A DNA stretch of 64,000 bases, taken from positions 149,275 through 213,274 of the IMG/VR virus record IMGVR_UViG_3300007735_000804, one strand, 5' to 3'. Position 1 is the first letter of the stretch. The number at the start of each line of letters is the position of its first letter. This document shows, piece after piece, positions 2,439 to 39,227 of this stretch. The translations under genes and the position numbers were made by a program. The notes under the pieces are model-generated. The model was not told the origin of the DNA and searched no databases. It was given only the letters and a program-made list of their open reading frames with translations.

Positions 2439-5400
2439 TTATTTCTTGTTAATTGACTTTTTTAAATCATCAATTTCAGTTTTTAAATCTTTAATTGCCT
2501 CAATCAGAAGTGGCACGAGTTTCTCATAACGAACTGCAAGATAACCATTTTCTCTAGATGTAACTGCTTGAGGTAAGACTTCAAGAATTTCTTGTGCAAC
2601 AACACCAATATCACTACCTTCCTTACCAGATTCATTGTTCCAATCAAAGGTATTGCCACTAATTGAAATGACTTTCTCAAGCGCATCTGGAATTGGGGTA
2701 ATATTATCCTTAAGTCTTTGGTCTGAAGTATAAAATGCGGTAATATCACCAGTTACATTTAAAGCACCATTAACTTGTGTTGAAGCATTAAACAACTGCA
2801 GAATTGTATTGTAAGATCCAGCACCATTCTTAACATTAAATTGGATTTGACCACTATTTGTGGTGTTATTAATTCCAAATACACCATCACCACCACCATC
2901 ACTATGAAGATCTCCTTGTCCGGCGCCACTAGAGTTAATGTTTAAGGCATTTACGGAGGTGCTGCCAGAAACAGATAGAGTGCTTGAGAGTGTCGTAGAT
3001 CCAGTGACATTCAATGTAGAATTGAATGTGGATATTCCAGTTACATTTAGTGTTGAATTAAGTGATGTTGCTCCAGTAACGCCCAATGTAGAACTTAATG
3101 TTGTTGCTCCAGTAACGCCTAATGTAGAACTTAATGTTGTTGCTCCAGTAACGTCCAATGTAGAACTTAATGTCGTTGCTCCAGTTACATTTAAGGTCCC
3201 ACCAACATTTAGATTTTTACCAATACCAACTCCACCCGAAATAATTAAGTTTCCAGTTGTGGTTGAAGTTGATTGCGACCCTTGTGTTAGACGAACTATA
3301 TTGTTAAAAGTAGATAGTGCTTTTATTCTCAACTCTTTGTTGAAGGTGACAGGACCATCAAATTGAGAAAGAACCGCGCCAGATACACCACCTTCAACTA
3401 GAAGTCTTTCTTTAACAGTAACTTCATCAAATACAACACTGAGTTTATTTGGGTCTTGACCCGTTACTGTTGGATTTGGAATGTCATAAGAAATAACTTC
3501 TCCGCTGGATGCGGAAGTTTTGGTGTTACCAGTGTAAAAATCACCATTGTTGTTCATACCTGTATAAACAACAACCCCACAAGAACGCTCTTGAGAATTT
3601 GCCAAGAAGTTTTCTTGGTCATTTAGAGTCTTAACTTGAACTTGTGGTAAACCTGTAGAATAGTTGCCAGGACCATAACCAAGATATTCAAAGGTATGTC
3701 CAGAAGCGCGAAGAATTGATGGTCTGCGGAATTCAATCGCAATTGGGTTGATTTTGCGAATTAATGAATTAGCATCATGATCTTCTTGAACTGTACCAAG
3801 AGCTCCACGAATAACAGACGCAGAAGTAGTATTATTACTACTTATAACTCTCATAATTTCATTATCAATTTGAATATAAGAACCTAGTGGTAATCTTTGT
3901 GCTGTTCCAATTCCAACACCAGTAATATTAATTACAGTGCCAGTGGTTAATGTAGATGTAAGTGTAAATTTATCGTTTGCATAGAAAGCGACGCTACGTG
4001 CCCCAAAGTTTTCACCCCTATCATCAGAAGTTGCTTCATTAGAACTGAGACCATGCTTTAAGATATAACCGCTTGCTGTTGCAATACCTACGTTAGTAAT
4101 TGCTGTAAATGTTGTTACGCCAACCTTTTTCTCTACAATATAATCTCCAAGATTGTTGTTGTTAGAATCGATAATTCTGAATTTATTTCCAACAAGAAGA
4201 CCGTGTGCAGAAGAAGTTGTAAATGTTGTAATACCAGTCGTGGATTCGGAAATTGCAGACGATAGACCAATAGAAGGTCCAACTACAAATACATATTGAC
4301 TACTTAAAATTATTGGATCTCCAGAAGTTTTAGCAATTGAAATTGTAGTTGAAGATGGGACAGATGTAATTCTGTAATAACCATCAGATGTTGTTCCAGT
4401 ACCCGTAACTTGAATTACATCATTAATATTGGTGGAAATACCTGCTGTAGTGATAGTATATCTTGCATTTCCATTACCAGTTCCGATTTTTGTTCTATCG
4501 AAGTGTAACCCAGTTGCTGAATAACCAGAACCAGGTGCCATAAGTTCTGCAGAAACTACACCACCACCAACTACTTCAACTTTTGCCGTTGCTCCATTCC
4601 AAGTTCCAACGGATGGATTTGAACTGCTATTTAAAAGTTTTACATTATAATAAACTCCATCATTGTAAGATGCACCTGAAGTTAGAGATGAATATGTTAC
4701 AATTCCAGAAAGACCATGGAATCTTGGGAATGTAATTGTGGCAATTCCTGAAGATGATGCAATAGAACTAATTGTAAGACCAATACCTATATCTTTAAGT
4801 GTAAGGTCTGCAGTTTCTCTAGTGATACTGTTCTTTAAATCATTTGTATCAATCGCACCAATTGGAGAGCGTTTTGCAAAAGTTTTTGCAGATGGTGGAT
4901 TATCATTTATATTATCACGATCAAGTTGTGGATATAAGTCTACTGGCAGTTGCCCATATTCAAGGTTTGTGAATAGATTTGCATTAACTGTATTGCTTGC
5001 ATTTAAAACATATAAATGATATATGCCGTCTTGTTGATTGTAAATATATGGGGAAATAACTTCATTTCGGTAAATATACAAGTTTCCTTGCAAATCATTC
5101 CTCTCAAATCTTGGAAGATTTACATCTCTAGTTGTTGTAGTATCTGTAAATGTTCCTGGTGTATGCCCATTACCTTCTACATCTGTAGTTGAATATTGAA
5201 AAGTATATGCGTCGCTGATAGCAGTAATCGCAAATCTTCCATTATAACCTTCATTGAATGTGCCACTTACATTTGAAGAACTTTTCACATTTCTGATGAT
5301 TACTAGATCTCCAACTTGAAGATCATGTGGTAATTCTGAAATAACTGTAACTGTGCTAGAAATTACAGAACAAGTTGAAATAAATCTTGGGTTTTTTAAG

Positions 5401-8312: not shown

Positions 8313-8385
8313 TACCCGTGAGTGGATTCGAACCACCGCTTGGAACATTTTAAGTGTTCTGCCTCTTCCGCTGGGCTACACGGGC
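8313..8385 (-). tRNA. trnL-UAA: tRNA-Leu (UAA), short variable loop, no encoded CCA
   Basis: Reverse complement folds as GCCCGTG TA GCC CAGCGGAAGA GGC A GAACA CTTAAAA TGTTC CAAGC GGTGG TTCGAAT CCACT CACGGGT A. Confidence 0.9.
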
Positions 8386-8462
8386 TGGTGGTCGCAGTGG
8401 GAATCTAACCCACCTTCGGCGGTTTATGAGACCGCTGCATTCGAACAGATTGCTATACGACC
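8386..8462 (-). tRNA. tRNA with CAU anticodon (Ile2-lysidine type or elongator Met; not initiator), CCA encoded
   Basis: GGTCGTA TA GCA ATCTGTTCGAA TGC A GCGGT CTCATAA ACCGC CGAAG GTGGG TTAGATT CCCAC TGCGACC ACCA. It has a G1-C72 pair and no GGG/CCC anticodon stem, so it is not fMet. The T-loop is the variant TTAGATT. Confidence 0.85.
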
Positions 8463-38254: not shown

Positions 38255-38418
38255 TTCTTTCCAAATCCTTTCGATGTTTTTGCTTCTAGTCCTGCAAGTT
38301 CTTCTTTTAGTGCTCGCAGTTGTTGTTTCATTTCTATAATTTTTTCTTCAGTATAAAGATGATCTTGCTTAACAAGTCTTTCAAGCAATTTTATCAATTT
38401 CCGTGCCCTATTAGTCAT
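38245..38418 (-). CDS. Small conserved hypothetical protein (57 aa); not in the ORF track
   Basis: Manual translation MTNRARKLIKLLERLVKQDHLYTEEKIIEMKQQLRALKEELAGLEAKTSKGFGKKWQ*; overlaps the thyX start. Confidence 0.7.
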   Translation of the reverse strand: MTNRARKLIKLLERLVKQDHLYTEEKIIEMKQQLRALKEELAGLEAKTSKGFGKKWQ

Positions 38419-38584
38419 CTAAATCAGAATCCTCAAAAATTTCGTCGTAATCTAGAATAGGTCTCTTTCTCACTTCTGGTTCTGTATATTTGTATGTAGA
38501 AGTGTCAGAATAAATTTCTGCTTTCAGAGAATCAACCAACAGTTCAAGATTACGAACAATCAGTTTTAGTTTGTCTTTGTCCAT
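38411..38584 (-). CDS. Small conserved hypothetical protein (57 aa); not in the ORF track
   Basis: Manual translation MDKDKLKLIVRNLELLVDSLKAEIYSDTSTYKYTEPEVRKRPILDYDEIFEDSDLDD*. Confidence 0.75.
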   Translation of the reverse strand: MDKDKLKLIVRNLELLVDSLKAEIYSDTSTYKYTEPEVRKRPILDYDEIFEDSDLDD

Positions 38585-38605
38585 AAGATACCATTCTCTT
38601 CGTCA

Positions 38606-38634
38606 ATTTTATCATAAAAAAAGGAGGGAATCAA
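38606..38634 (-). promoter_or_regulatory. sigma70-type promoter overlapping a terminator
   Basis: TTGATT-17 nt-TAAAAT with an extended -10 TG; the -35 hexamer forms the terminator loop. Confidence 0.55.
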
Positions 38635-38641
38635 CCCTCCT
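38616..38641 (-). terminator. Rho-independent terminator
   Basis: AGGAGGG-UUGAUU-CCCUCCU followed by a U-tract on minus. Confidence 0.8.
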
Positions 38642-38646
38642 AAACA

Positions 38647-38739
38647 TCAAGCAATTTGTGGTTGCTTTGCCATATTCAGTTGTGCTTCACGAAGACGCTT
38701 TTCTTTCAGCAGTTTTTGTTTAATAAGAATCAGTACCAT
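38647..38739 (-). CDS. 30-aa basic peptide (possible IF7/DUF4278-like); not in the ORF track
   Basis: AAGGA SD, then MVLILIKQKLLKEKRLREAQLNMAKQPQIA*, followed at once by a terminator. Confidence 0.55.
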   Translation of the reverse strand: MVLILIKQKLLKEKRLREAQLNMAKQPQIA

Positions 38740-38781
38740 TAGTTTGTTCCTTTACGTTATGATAATTTATACAAGTTTTTT

Positions 38782-38797
38782 TGTATAATGTGATACA
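38782..38797. promoter_or_regulatory. Consensus NtcA-binding palindrome
   Basis: TGTA-TAATGTGA-TACA (TGTA-N8-TACA) in the intergenic region 43 nt upstream of the 30-aa ORF. Confidence 0.55.
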
Positions 38798-38858
38798 ATT
38801 TTATAAAAATCTTAAGGGGCAAAAAAATTGCCGGGATTTTTTCCCAGCATTCGGTAAA

Positions 38859-39227
38859 TTACTTTCGCTTTTTCTTTTCGGGTGACTTATAACCCCAGAG
38901 TTTTGGATTGACTCGTCCATATCCAAAGTCAATACTCTTTAGATTATCACGAAACTTATCCCAGTACATATCAAATAATTTAACTCTTCCACCACGGGTA
39001 AGGTCAAAGCAAATCTTATCATCAACGAAATATTTCACAATATAAGCATCATTCGGCGCTTCCTTGGTGCAAACATCAGCATATGAACCATTCTCAACCA
39101 AAATGTCACAACCATAACGTGACTTACAAGTTTCTTTTTCTGCGGATGTCCAATGGTCCATGTGTTTTTCTGTATTTTGCGTTTCTTCAACTACATTATG
39201 AACTTGGCTCACGAACGTCCTCCCCAA
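38859..39227 (-). CDS. Conserved cyanomyophage hypothetical protein
   Basis: ORF track; C-terminal GYGRVNPKLWGY...KKKRK. True start uncertain. Confidence 0.7.
   Translation of the reverse strand: MGRTFVSQVHNVVEETQNTEKHMDHWTSAEKETCKSRYGCDILVENGSYADVCTKEAPNDAYIVKYFVDDKICFDLTRGGRVKLFDMYWDKFRDNLKSIDFGYGRVNPKLWGYKSPEKKKRK

What the first reader, a model, noticed from the sequence alone, without database searches (positions are those of the whole stretch)
38647..38797. Perfect NtcA box upstream of an unannotated 30-aa basic peptide: possible phage control of host nitrogen assimilation
TGTA-N8-TACA lies 43 nt upstream of an SD-led ORF, MVLILIKQKLLKEKRLREAQLNMAKQPQIA, which has its own terminator; an overlapping ttatacaa/ttgtataa palindrome is also present (seen). 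NtcA is the cyanobacterial nitrogen regulator and represses gifA/gifB, which encode small basic glutamine synthetase inactivating factors (established). A monocistronic, K/R-rich peptide with an NtcA box over its likely -35 region resembles a gif-type unit, so the phage may sense host N status and modulate GS (inference; family membership unverified).
Basis: partly seen in the sequence, partly recalled or inferred. Interest (0 to 1): 0.6.

Follow-up and report, generated by a model that had tools for sequence, protein, structure and literature searches.

The report
Nitrogen-controlled phage micro-protein gene, stripped-down form
A freshwater cyanophage carries a real 30-residue gene behind a conserved binding site for the host nitrogen regulator NtcA; it is the minimal remnant of a widespread phage copy of a host nitrogen-controlled small-protein gene, so the phage probably reads host nitrogen status, but what the peptide targets is unknown.

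Summary
The 16-mer TGTA-N8-TACA (38797-38782, minus strand), the SD-led 30-aa ORF (38739-38647) and its terminator are all there.

In this genome alone the box is no more than chance. Comparison makes it real:
- At least 119 IMG/VR cyanophage contigs carry the same peptide family.
- All 47 distinct promoter regions examined have a GTA-N8-TAC box with a variable spacer. It sits at a fixed distance from a TAWATA promoter hexamer and is followed by glutamine riboswitch(es).
- Downstream come a YRG-repeat (DUF4278-like) micro-protein and, start overlapping stop, this peptide.

The window's copy has lost the riboswitch and the YRG gene. It keeps the box, hexamer, SD, peptide and terminator. This form recurs in two other viral contigs and in independent metagenomes.

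The peptide is 67% identical to the N-terminal helix of 83-aa picocyanobacterial DUF4278 ("IF17-like") proteins. Their genes carry glutamine-II riboswitches and NtcA-type boxes.

So a gif-like regulatory unit is supported. Membership in IF7/IF17 proper and any effect on glutamine synthetase are not shown. The box centre lies about -31 to -38 from any plausible start, which favours repression as at gifB; this is inferred, not measured.

The parts
38829..38849 (-). Intrinsic terminator of the upstream 122-aa gene (phrog_485). It isolates the unit on its 5' side.
   Evidence: 8-bp stem with 5 G-C pairs, followed by a T-run. for the family of the upstream gene.
38782..38797 (-). NtcA-type box TGTA-N8-TACA (core GTA-N8-TAC at 38796..38783). 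It is followed by the conserved A-tract.
   Evidence: Searches show it in the sequence; 47 of 47 distinct related promoters have a box here, with GTA/TAC fixed and the spacer variable. L072 and L107 carry the identical 16-mer. L129 and L130 are identical through the whole promoter. The variant contig in run X5 changes only the outermost base, 38797.
38764..38774 (-). Core promoter element: TTG at 38774..38772, then TATAAATT at 38771..38764. Its last six bases, TAAATT (38769..38764), occupy the conserved TAWATA position 13 nt after the box. It could be a -10 hexamer or a T4-type late promoter.
   Evidence: position-specific counts over 45 distinct sequences (T14 A15 W16 A17 T18 A19 after TAC); in class-2 loci this is the only possible promoter between the box and the aptamer.
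38755..38759 (-). Predicted transcription start region (about 38757). This leaves a leader of about 18 nt. It is also the approximate junction where relatives have riboswitch(es), with or without a YRG gene, and the window has nothing.
   Evidence: Inference from the hexamer position. Homology to L022 ends near 38764. Homology to the post-aptamer SD region of L122 starts near 38761.
38748..38752 (-). Shine-Dalgarno AAGGA, 8 nt before the ATG.
   Evidence: The same SD context follows the aptamer in L122.
38647..38739 (-). 30-aa basic helical peptide gene. It belongs to a phage family with the C-terminal motif AQ(L/I)NMAK(Q/K)(P/S)Q(V/I)A, and is homologous to the N-terminal helix of host 83-aa DUF4278 proteins.
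38615..38641 (-). Intrinsic terminator of the peptide gene. Its loop and 3' arm hold the -35 (TTGATT, 38634..38629) of a sigma-70-like promoter (TG-extended -10 TAAAAT, 38611..38606) for the next gene (57 aa, phrog_878).
   Evidence: The same arrangement is conserved in nearly all related loci.

Best explanation
The locus is a functional, monocistronic small-protein gene of a T4-like freshwater cyanophage. The closest isolate is Synechococcus phage S-SRM01.

It is the minimal form of a cassette that is widespread in such phages. In the full cassette an NtcA-box promoter and one or two glutamine riboswitch aptamers control two genes. The first is a YRG-repeat (DUF4278-like) micro-protein. The second, translationally coupled to it, is a 30-35-aa basic helix peptide.

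The cassette is a viral derivative of a host gene class: the picocyanobacterial 'Downstream-peptide' or IF17-like DUF4278 proteins. In these, helix and YRG repeats are one polypeptide. Their genes carry glutamine-II riboswitches and NtcA-type boxes.

In the window the riboswitch and the YRG gene are gone. The box, the conserved TAWATA hexamer 13 nt downstream, the SD, the helix peptide and the terminator remain.

How it probably works:
- Transcription most likely starts about 38757, so the box centre sits near -32. With the alternative -10 (TATCAT) it would sit near -37.
- At that position 2-oxoglutarate-activated NtcA would occlude the promoter under nitrogen limitation, as at gifB (-30.5) and Anabaena gifA (-28.5).
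- The peptide would then be made when the infected cell is nitrogen-replete.
- The peptide is a single amphipathic basic helix. It most likely acts as a stand-alone mimic of the host protein's conserved N-terminal helix and engages that protein's still unidentified partner. Glutamine synthetase is the leading but unproven candidate.

Shown: sequence features, family, conservation, coding selection, homology to the host protein, and the riboswitch and box associations.
Inferred: the start site, the sign of NtcA control, translation in vivo, and the target.
For: - At least 119 IMG/VR contigs share the peptide's exact 21-mer core.
- There are 48 distinct peptides, almost always preceded by a 45-55-aa YRG..YRG ORF whose stop abuts or overlaps the peptide's start.
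- All 30 YRG ORFs tested hit Pfam DUF4278, below threshold (best E 1e-4).
- Coding selection: codon-position entropies are 0.29 / 0.26 / 0.87. Orphan-form relatives L129 and L130 have an in-frame 6-nt indel.
- 98 of 117 loci have the riboswitch core upstream.
- RF01739 passes its gathering score in L052, L026, L008, L107 and L015.
- 47 of 47 distinct promoters have GTA-N8-TAC, against a background of 0.36 per kb.
- The geometry is conserved: box, AAAA, TTG, then TAWATA at +14..+19, in the window too.
- In class-2 loci the aptamer starts 24-25 nt after the box, so the box must overlap the core promoter.
- In class-1 loci a hairpin with covarying arms follows the hexamer. This suggests that stretch is transcribed.
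- L122 and L041 have an aptamer directly before the peptide gene with no YRG gene between.
- The riboswitch-less form is identical in an independent river metagenome (X4) and present as a variant in X5. It also occurs in L129 and L130.
- The own genome, 100% complete by CheckV, has no YRG ORF and no glutamine riboswitch. The YRG search was validated on S-SRM01 and on the records of L107 and L079.
- Host homology: the window peptide matches P0034 residues 3-26 at 16 of 24 identical, E 1e-8. The profile-profile comparison gives 93% probability, E 2.6e-7.
- P0020 is a DUF4278 protein above threshold with the helix fused directly before YRG, twice.
- Host loci L127, L128 and L124 have RF01704 at 44.7, 44.5 and 34.4 bits (threshold 33). 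Each also has a GTA-N8-(T/G)AC box just upstream.
- An AlphaFold model of the host protein has a helix at residues 3-29 and low confidence elsewhere.
- Literature: DUF4278 is the N-terminal moiety of IF17; IF17-like genes in Prochlorococcus have a riboswitch and an NtcA site; NtcA sites at -30.5, -7.5 and -28.5 repress the gif genes (PMC6212724; PMC6316151).
Against: - No transcription start is mapped for any of these phages.
- In the majority (class-1) relatives a near-consensus sigma-70 promoter lies between box and aptamer. That would put the box near -50, not a classical repressor position.
- Host locus L128 and S-SRM01 have spacings nearer -36 to -38.
- The TAWATA hexamer resembles a T4-type late promoter. 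How NtcA would act on such a promoter is unknown.
- Contigs from the RNA library cover the promoter as well as its neighbours, so DNA carry-over or read-through cannot be excluded.
- The peptide lacks the YRG motif. It corresponds to a region outside the part of IF17 known to bind GS.
- No IF-type GS regulation has been demonstrated in picocyanobacteria (PMC6316151).
- The co-fold with Synechocystis GS gave no answer.
Confidence: 0.62

Rival explanations
1. The same gene and the same NtcA box, but NtcA activates it. The peptide would then be made under nitrogen stress, including the stress that infection itself causes. This follows the proposal that cyanomyophages exploit NtcA-driven promoters.
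For: - Sullivan et al. 2010 (PMC3037559) report 1-16 NtcA sites per marine cyanomyophage and propose activation.
- In class-1 relatives the box lies upstream of a -35 element, centre about -50, on the same helical face as -41.5.
- In L128 and S-SRM01 the spacing (about -36 to -38) is only a few bases short of the activator position.
Against: - In the window a centre at -41.5 would put the start inside the SD (about 38748), leaving a 9-nt leader without an SD.
- In class-2 loci the aptamer begins 24-25 nt after the box, which excludes -41.5.
- Activation by nitrogen limitation would oppose the glutamine-ON riboswitch that accompanies the box in relatives.
- It would also oppose the nitrogen-starvation repression reported for the host homologues (PMC2864571, PMC6212724).
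Confidence: 0.2
2. The palindrome is a conserved phage promoter or operator element read by another protein, such as a phage factor or another CRP-family protein, or it is purely structural. Under this view the gene is not linked to nitrogen status.
For: - No binding data exist.
- The whole genome has only two intergenic boxes, so there is no NtcA regulon signature.
- The adjacent hexamer resembles a T4-type late promoter.
Against: - The invariant half-sites are exactly GTA/TAC with an 8-nt variable spacer, often extended to TGTA/TACA.
- The box travels with glutamine riboswitches in phages.
- The host homologues carry the same kind of box together with glutamine-II riboswitches.
Confidence: 0.1
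3. The window's unit is a decaying remnant of the cassette left by a deletion. It would be transcribed weakly or not at all, and the ORF would not be functional.
For: - The riboswitch and the YRG gene are missing.
- The consensus -10 used by class-1 relatives is lost.
- No expression is shown.
Against: - The deletion joins the promoter hexamer precisely to an intact SD and ORF.
- The form persists in at least 3 viral contigs and 2 further metagenomes, with conservative or in-frame changes in the ORF.
- The promoter is 100% conserved while the flanks diverge.
- Independent loci (L122, L041) also express the peptide gene alone behind an aptamer.
Confidence: 0.08

Closest known systems
gifB / IF17 (and gifA / IF7) of Synechocystis and Anabaena: small basic inhibitors of glutamine synthetase, repressed by NtcA. 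gifB also has a glutamine riboswitch.
   Same: - A small basic protein gene with an NtcA box over the core promoter. The predicted centre is about -31 to -38, compared with -30.5 and -28.5.
- In the phage relatives a glutamine riboswitch lies in the leader and a DUF4278-like ORF follows.
   Different: - The window peptide has no DUF4278 or YRG motif.
- It was not shown to resemble the GS-binding IF7-like domain.
- It has no riboswitch in this genome.
- It is phage-encoded.
- GS inhibition is untested.
Picocyanobacterial 'Downstream-peptide' / IF17-like DUF4278 proteins with glutamine-II riboswitches. Examples are P0033 from a Cyanobacteria MAG and P0034; the class is described by Weinberg 2010 and Klaehn 2018.
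   Same: - The window peptide is 67% identical to their N-terminal helix (residues 3-26).
- Their genes carry NtcA-type boxes close to the start.
   Different: - The host proteins continue into 2-3 YRG repeats; the phage peptide ends after the helix.
- In the full phage cassettes helix and YRG parts are separate ORFs, in the reverse order.
- The host genes use type-2 aptamers and the phages use type-1 (glnA) aptamers.
NtcA boxes and glnA-type riboswitches already annotated in T4-like cyanophages (Sullivan 2010; the S-CREM1 paper, 2023).
   Same: A host nitrogen-regulatory cis element carried by a T4-like cyanomyophage.
   Different: - In the papers read here, boxes and aptamers were listed without linking them to each other.
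- They were not linked to a DUF4278-like gene, to this peptide, or to host IF17-like genes.
- No paper in the searchable library mentions DUF4278 together with phage.

Membership tests
NtcA-regulated promoter | Palindrome GTA-N8-TAC, ideally TGTA-N8-TACA | tested here: met
   Perfect 16-mer at 38797..38782.
NtcA-regulated promoter | Box conserved in orthologous promoters, with fixed half-sites and a free spacer | tested here: met
   47 of 47 distinct related promoters, with 31 different boxes. Host homologue loci also carry a box.
NtcA-regulated promoter | Defined position relative to the transcription start: about -41.5 for activation, or over the core promoter for repression | tested here: inconclusive
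   Only predicted starts are available. The centre is about -32 (TAAATT as -10) or about -37 (TATCAT) in the window, about -30 in class-2 relatives, and about -50 from the sigma-70 promoter of class-1 relatives.
NtcA-regulated promoter | 2-oxoglutarate-dependent NtcA binding and nitrogen-dependent expression | not testable with these tools
   Needs EMSA and infection transcriptomics. The RNA-library contigs were uninformative.
GS inactivating factors IF7 / IF17 | DUF4278 domain (N-terminal moiety of IF17) | tested here: not met
   No Pfam hit for the window peptide even at E up to 10, and no YRG motif. The neighbouring ORF in relatives does match.
GS inactivating factors IF7 / IF17 | IF7-like GS-binding domain with three essential arginines | not tested
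Pfam, NCBIfam and PDB profile searches gave nothing.
GS inactivating factors IF7 / IF17 | Inhibition of glutamine synthetase by direct binding | not testable with these tools
   The co-fold with Synechocystis GS gave no verdict. This is not evidence either way.
Glutamine riboswitch-controlled gene (RF01739 / RF01704) | Aptamer in the 5' leader | tested here: not met
   None in window 38400-39000 at E up to 10, and none in the whole genome. Present in relatives.
Picocyanobacterial helix-YRG DUF4278 ('IF17-like', Downstream-peptide) proteins | Conserved N-terminal helix (..L.LIR.K.LK..RL..AQ..MAK) | tested here: met
   BLASTP gives 16 of 24 identical, E 1e-8. hhalign gives 93% probability, E 2.6e-7.
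Picocyanobacterial helix-YRG DUF4278 ('IF17-like', Downstream-peptide) proteins | YRG / LTYRG repeats | tested here: not met
   The window peptide ends 4 residues after the helix. No YRG ORF exists anywhere in the genome (with a positive control).
Phage helix-peptide family (C-terminal NMAKQPQ motif; defined here) | 29-41 aa, a basic helix, then AQ(L/I)NMAK(Q/K)(P/S)Q(V/I)A. Encoded after an NtcA-box promoter, with or without a riboswitch or a YRG ORF. | tested here: met
   The closest member, P0007, differs at 4 of 30 positions.

The most novel reading that the evidence does not exclude
Freshwater cyanophages have captured, split and rearranged the host's NtcA- and glutamine-controlled IF17-like gene. 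The 30-aa helix alone, as kept in this genome, would be the active module: a viral mimic of the host protein's N-terminal helix that binds the same host target and re-tunes nitrogen assimilation. The target would be glutamine synthetase or another nitrogen-metabolism protein, and the effect would occur specifically in nitrogen-replete infected cells. If so, this minimal phage peptide would be a direct handle on the unknown function of the picocyanobacterial Downstream-peptide / IF17-like proteins.
Probability: 0.3. Interest if true: 0.78.

Novelty: new variant of a known kind. Interest (0 to 1): 0.62.

Why it matters
NtcA boxes and glutamine riboswitches in cyanophages, and NtcA plus riboswitch control of DUF4278 / IF17-like genes in cyanobacteria, are each known separately. 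This locus and its relatives connect them.

- Phages carry their own version of the host's nitrogen-controlled IF17-like unit.
- One phage lineage has reduced it to a 30-residue helix under the NtcA box alone.
- That points to the conserved N-terminal helix as a functional module of a host protein class whose role has been open since 2010 (do picocyanobacteria have GS inactivating factors?).
- It offers a small synthetic peptide for testing.
- It offers a cultured system for the full cassette: S-SRM01 on Synechococcus sp. KCZYC6.
- It gives a concrete case for whether phages sense host nitrogen status through NtcA.

Tried and rejected
- tblastn of the 30-aa peptide against 50,697 phage records gave no match. 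The query is too short; S-SRM01 does have a homologue, seen by DNA alignment.
- Pfam, PHROGs and NCBIfam gave nothing significant for the peptide. A weak phrog_545 hit (E 0.11) was not pursued.
- PDB profile searches with the peptide family and with the YRG family gave only chance-level hits.
- ESM Atlas look-alikes were eukaryotic coiled-coil clusters at 0.78, below any useful level.
- Rfam on the window region gave only chance-level hits. A weak Yfr10 hit on S-SRM01 (20 bits against a threshold of 43) was rejected.
- The co-fold of the peptide with two copies of Synechocystis glutamine synthetase gave no answer, score 0.00. The enzyme is not the cognate one. This is not evidence for or against binding.
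- Reads: the one RNA library holding related sequence has contigs over 38738-38816 and over the neighbouring genes. Only contigs are kept and DNA carry-over is possible, so neither expression nor a start site can be read from it.
- The genome-contig scan for the NMAKQPQ motif found one hit in 185,579 genomes, on a 12-kb scaffold of a 'Bacteroidota' MAG. It was taken as a probable mis-binned phage contig and not examined further.
- Chance occurrence of the box was rejected by the comparative data. A non-coding sRNA reading was rejected by the codon-position pattern and the in-frame indels.
Only genetic code 11 was used.

Full report
**What is there.** The window is bases 149275-213274 of a 213-kb IMG/VR virus record rated complete. 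It is a T4-like cyanomyovirus. The nearest isolate is the freshwater Synechococcus phage S-SRM01 (Kyanoviridae), about 82% identical here. Genes in this part run on the minus strand: PhoH, ThyX and several small ORFs.

Between the 122-aa gene (phrog_485, with its own terminator at 38849..38829) and the 57-aa gene (phrog_878) lie the following features:
- the 16-mer TGTA-N8-TACA at 38797..38782;
- an A-tract;
- TTG followed by TATAAATT (38774..38764);
- an AAGGA Shine-Dalgarno (38752..38748);
- the 30-codon ORF 38739..38647;
- a terminator at 38641..38622.

**Is it more than chance?** Not on internal evidence. The 16-mer pattern occurs twice in the window against 1.75 expected. The whole genome has 64 GTA-N8-TAC, only two of them outside long ORFs.

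The comparative evidence is decisive. After orienting these loci:
- 98 of 117 have the glutamine-riboswitch core upstream of the ORF;
- all 47 distinct sequences upstream of the first aptamer carry GTA-N8-TAC, with 31 different boxes, against a background of 0.36 per kb;
- the half-sites are invariant while the 8-nt spacer varies freely;
- two loci (L072, L107) have the very 16-mer of the window, and in L107 it is followed by a riboswitch that passes Rfam's gathering score.

**The cassette in relatives.** The usual order has five parts:
- an NtcA-type box;
- a promoter;
- one or two glnA-type aptamers (RF01739 at 35-54 bits in L015, L107, L008, L026 and L052; 28.9 bits in S-SRM01);
- a 45-55-aa ORF with two YRG motifs;
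- the 30-35-aa peptide ORF, whose ATG overlaps or abuts the preceding stop.

A terminator follows, and its loop carries the -35 of the next promoter. All 30 YRG ORFs tested give sub-threshold hits to Pfam DUF4278 and to no other consistent family.

The peptide family (alignment A2) has a hydrophobic and basic N-terminal part and a near-invariant C-terminal motif. In 68 distinct DNA versions the entropy at codon positions 1, 2 and 3 is 0.29, 0.26 and 0.87. It is therefore a translated gene, not an RNA element.

**The window's form.** Alignment with S-SRM01 and with the other loci shows that the window lacks the aptamers and the YRG gene.
- Homology to the promoters of relatives runs through the box and the TTG..TATAAATT element, to about 38764.
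- Homology to the post-aptamer SD region of L122 resumes at about 38761.
- The genome has no YRG ORF and no glutamine riboswitch anywhere. The YRG profile was validated on S-SRM01 and on the records of two relatives.

This is not an assembly artefact.
- An independent river metagenome has contigs identical over 38562-38878.
- A sediment metagenome has a diverged contig spanning 38425-38873. In the listed differences (31 more were not shown), the only change from 38647 to 38797 is the outermost base of the 16-mer.
- Two more viral contigs (L129, L130) have the same riboswitch-less unit. Their promoter and SD are 100% identical while the upstream flank of L129 is diverged, and the ORF's 3' end has an in-frame 6-nt indel.

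The closest peptide, P0007 (4 of 30 residues different), sits directly behind a glnA-like aptamer with no YRG gene (L122). L041 is similar. The peptide is therefore repeatedly kept as the sole product of the unit.

**Where the peptide comes from.** An exhaustive profile search of 1.84 billion representative proteins found only 23 clusters, nearly all 29-41 aa. One is a 127-aa protein, P0020. It passes the DUF4278 threshold and has the helix fused directly in front of YRG, twice.

Its relatives include 83-aa proteins from cyanobacterial genomes and MAGs. In these, an invariant N-terminal helix is followed by two or three YRG repeats.
- The window peptide aligns to residues 3-26 of P0034 with 16 of 24 identities (E 1e-8).
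- The family profiles match at 93% probability.
- The phage YRG ORFs match the YRG part more weakly.
- The three host loci examined carry glutamine-II riboswitches (RF01704 at 44.7, 44.5 and 34.4 bits).
- Each also has a GTA-N8-(T/G)AC box within about 45 nt upstream.

These are the 'Downstream-peptide' or IF17-like genes of Weinberg 2010 and Klaehn 2018. They are reported as repressed on nitrogen starvation and as having an NtcA site over the start in Prochlorococcus MED4. DUF4278 is the N-terminal moiety of IF17.

The exact phage motif is absent from 185,579 prokaryote genomes, apart from one probably mis-binned scaffold. An AlphaFold model of the host protein has one confident helix (residues 3-29) and little else. 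This fits a disordered basic effector with a helical head.

**Promoter geometry and the sign of control.** Counting from the C of TAC, 45 distinct promoters share AAAA at +1..+4, TTG at +9..+11 and T-A-W-A-T-A at +14..+19. The window has TAAATT at the last position.

| Promoter | Layout after the box | Predicted box centre |
|---|---|---|
| Class 2 (nine distinct sequences) | aptamer begins 24-25 nt after TAC; TAWATA is the only possible -10 or late-type element | about -30 |
| Class 1 (majority) | a 20-nt hairpin lies between hexamer and aptamer; TTGACT-17-TATAAT also present | about -31 to -32 from the TAWATA start; about -50 from the TTGACT-17-TATAAT start |
| Window, TAAATT as -10 | start near 38757, 18-nt leader with intact SD | about -32 |
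| Window, TATCAT as -10 | start near 38752 | about -37 |

For the class-1 loci two points bear on which promoter is used. The arms of the hairpin covary (22 different 5' arms in 29 distinct sequences). This suggests the stretch is transcribed, that is, that the start lies just after TAWATA. The loop of that hairpin is also a TATAAT. Together with TTGACT it forms a near-consensus sigma-70 promoter, so two promoters may coexist.

For the window, a -41.5 activator geometry would start the RNA inside the SD.

Repressing NtcA sites are reported at -30.5 and -7.5 (Synechocystis gif genes) and at -28.5 (Anabaena gifA). Repression under nitrogen limitation would also agree with the glutamine-ON riboswitch of the relatives and with the behaviour reported for the host homologues. 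I therefore favour repression, at roughly 3:1 over activation. No start site, binding or expression datum exists. The single RNA library with related contigs cannot settle it.

**Function.** The peptide is a single basic amphipathic helix, homologous to the most conserved part of a host protein class whose function is itself unproven.
- the peptide has no DUF4278 or YRG motif;
- the IF17 N-terminal moiety is reported as dispensable for GS inactivation;
- the peptide was not compared with the IF7-like domain.

A co-fold with a non-cognate GS gave no verdict. What the data do support is narrower: the helix is a separable module that phages keep on its own under a host nitrogen signal.

**Novelty.** NtcA boxes in cyanomyophages and glnA RNAs in cyanophages are published, and so is the host NtcA / riboswitch / DUF4278 unit. 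I found no paper that mentions DUF4278 in phages, or this peptide. The phage cassette is split, permuted and in this genome reduced to the helix. It is best called a new variant of a known kind.

Noticed in passing
Related loci, not the window: L122 180-440; L006, L007, L010, L012, L018, L025, L040 (the ~68-aa ORF). L001 (S-SRM01) 2975-3199 minus strand; L005, L010, L014, L018, L031, L039 (the ~50-55-aa ORF).: Two small-ORF families are nested inside glutamine-riboswitch aptamers. In both, the start codon follows directly on the aptamer's 5' strand (CGTTCATC..). The conserved 3' half of the same aptamer follows the stop of the ~68-aa ORF. For the ~50-aa ORF, that 3' half actually encodes the last codons and the stop. 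ORF-less versions of the same aptamer have a short hairpin at that place. The ORFs therefore occupy the aptamer's variable loop.
   Followed up: partly
Related class-1 loci, the 28 nt before the first aptamer (for example L055, L107, L008): The TATAAT -10 hexamer just 5' of the aptamer sits in the loop of a hairpin whose arms covary. There are 22 distinct 5' arms in 29 distinct sequences, all with MFE of -3.9 kcal/mol or lower. It could be a promoter element, a 5'-leader RNA structure, or both; this is unresolved.
   Followed up: partly
window 38606-38641 (minus strand), and the same place in nearly all related loci: The terminator of the peptide gene carries the -35 hexamer (TTGATT or TTGACT) of the next gene's sigma-70-like promoter in its loop and 3' arm. 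A TG-extended -10 lies 17 nt downstream. This is a conserved composite of terminator and promoter.
   Followed up: no
L001 (S-SRM01) about 3233-3246 minus strand, compared with L128 2875-2888: The NtcA-type box of S-SRM01 differs at one of 14 bases from the box of a cyanobacterial helix-YRG gene. It also lies at almost the same distance from the aptamer (30 against 31 nt). This hints that the promoter was captured together with the gene.
   Followed up: no
window 1-64000: GTA-N8-TAC occurs 23 times against 12.7 expected. Several copies are duplicated 14-mers (20726 and 20798; 57617 and 59921; 59962 and 60934). Over the whole genome only two boxes lie outside ORFs of 70 aa or more. The excess therefore looks like a repeat or composition effect, not a regulon.
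   Followed up: partly
window 8313-8462 (minus strand): Two adjacent tRNA genes (Rfam 56.6 and 52.7 bits).
   Followed up: no
L052 4862-4959: A related phage contig carries a wcaG RNA motif (96 bits) and three tRNAs a few kb from its glutamine-riboswitch cassette.
   Followed up: no
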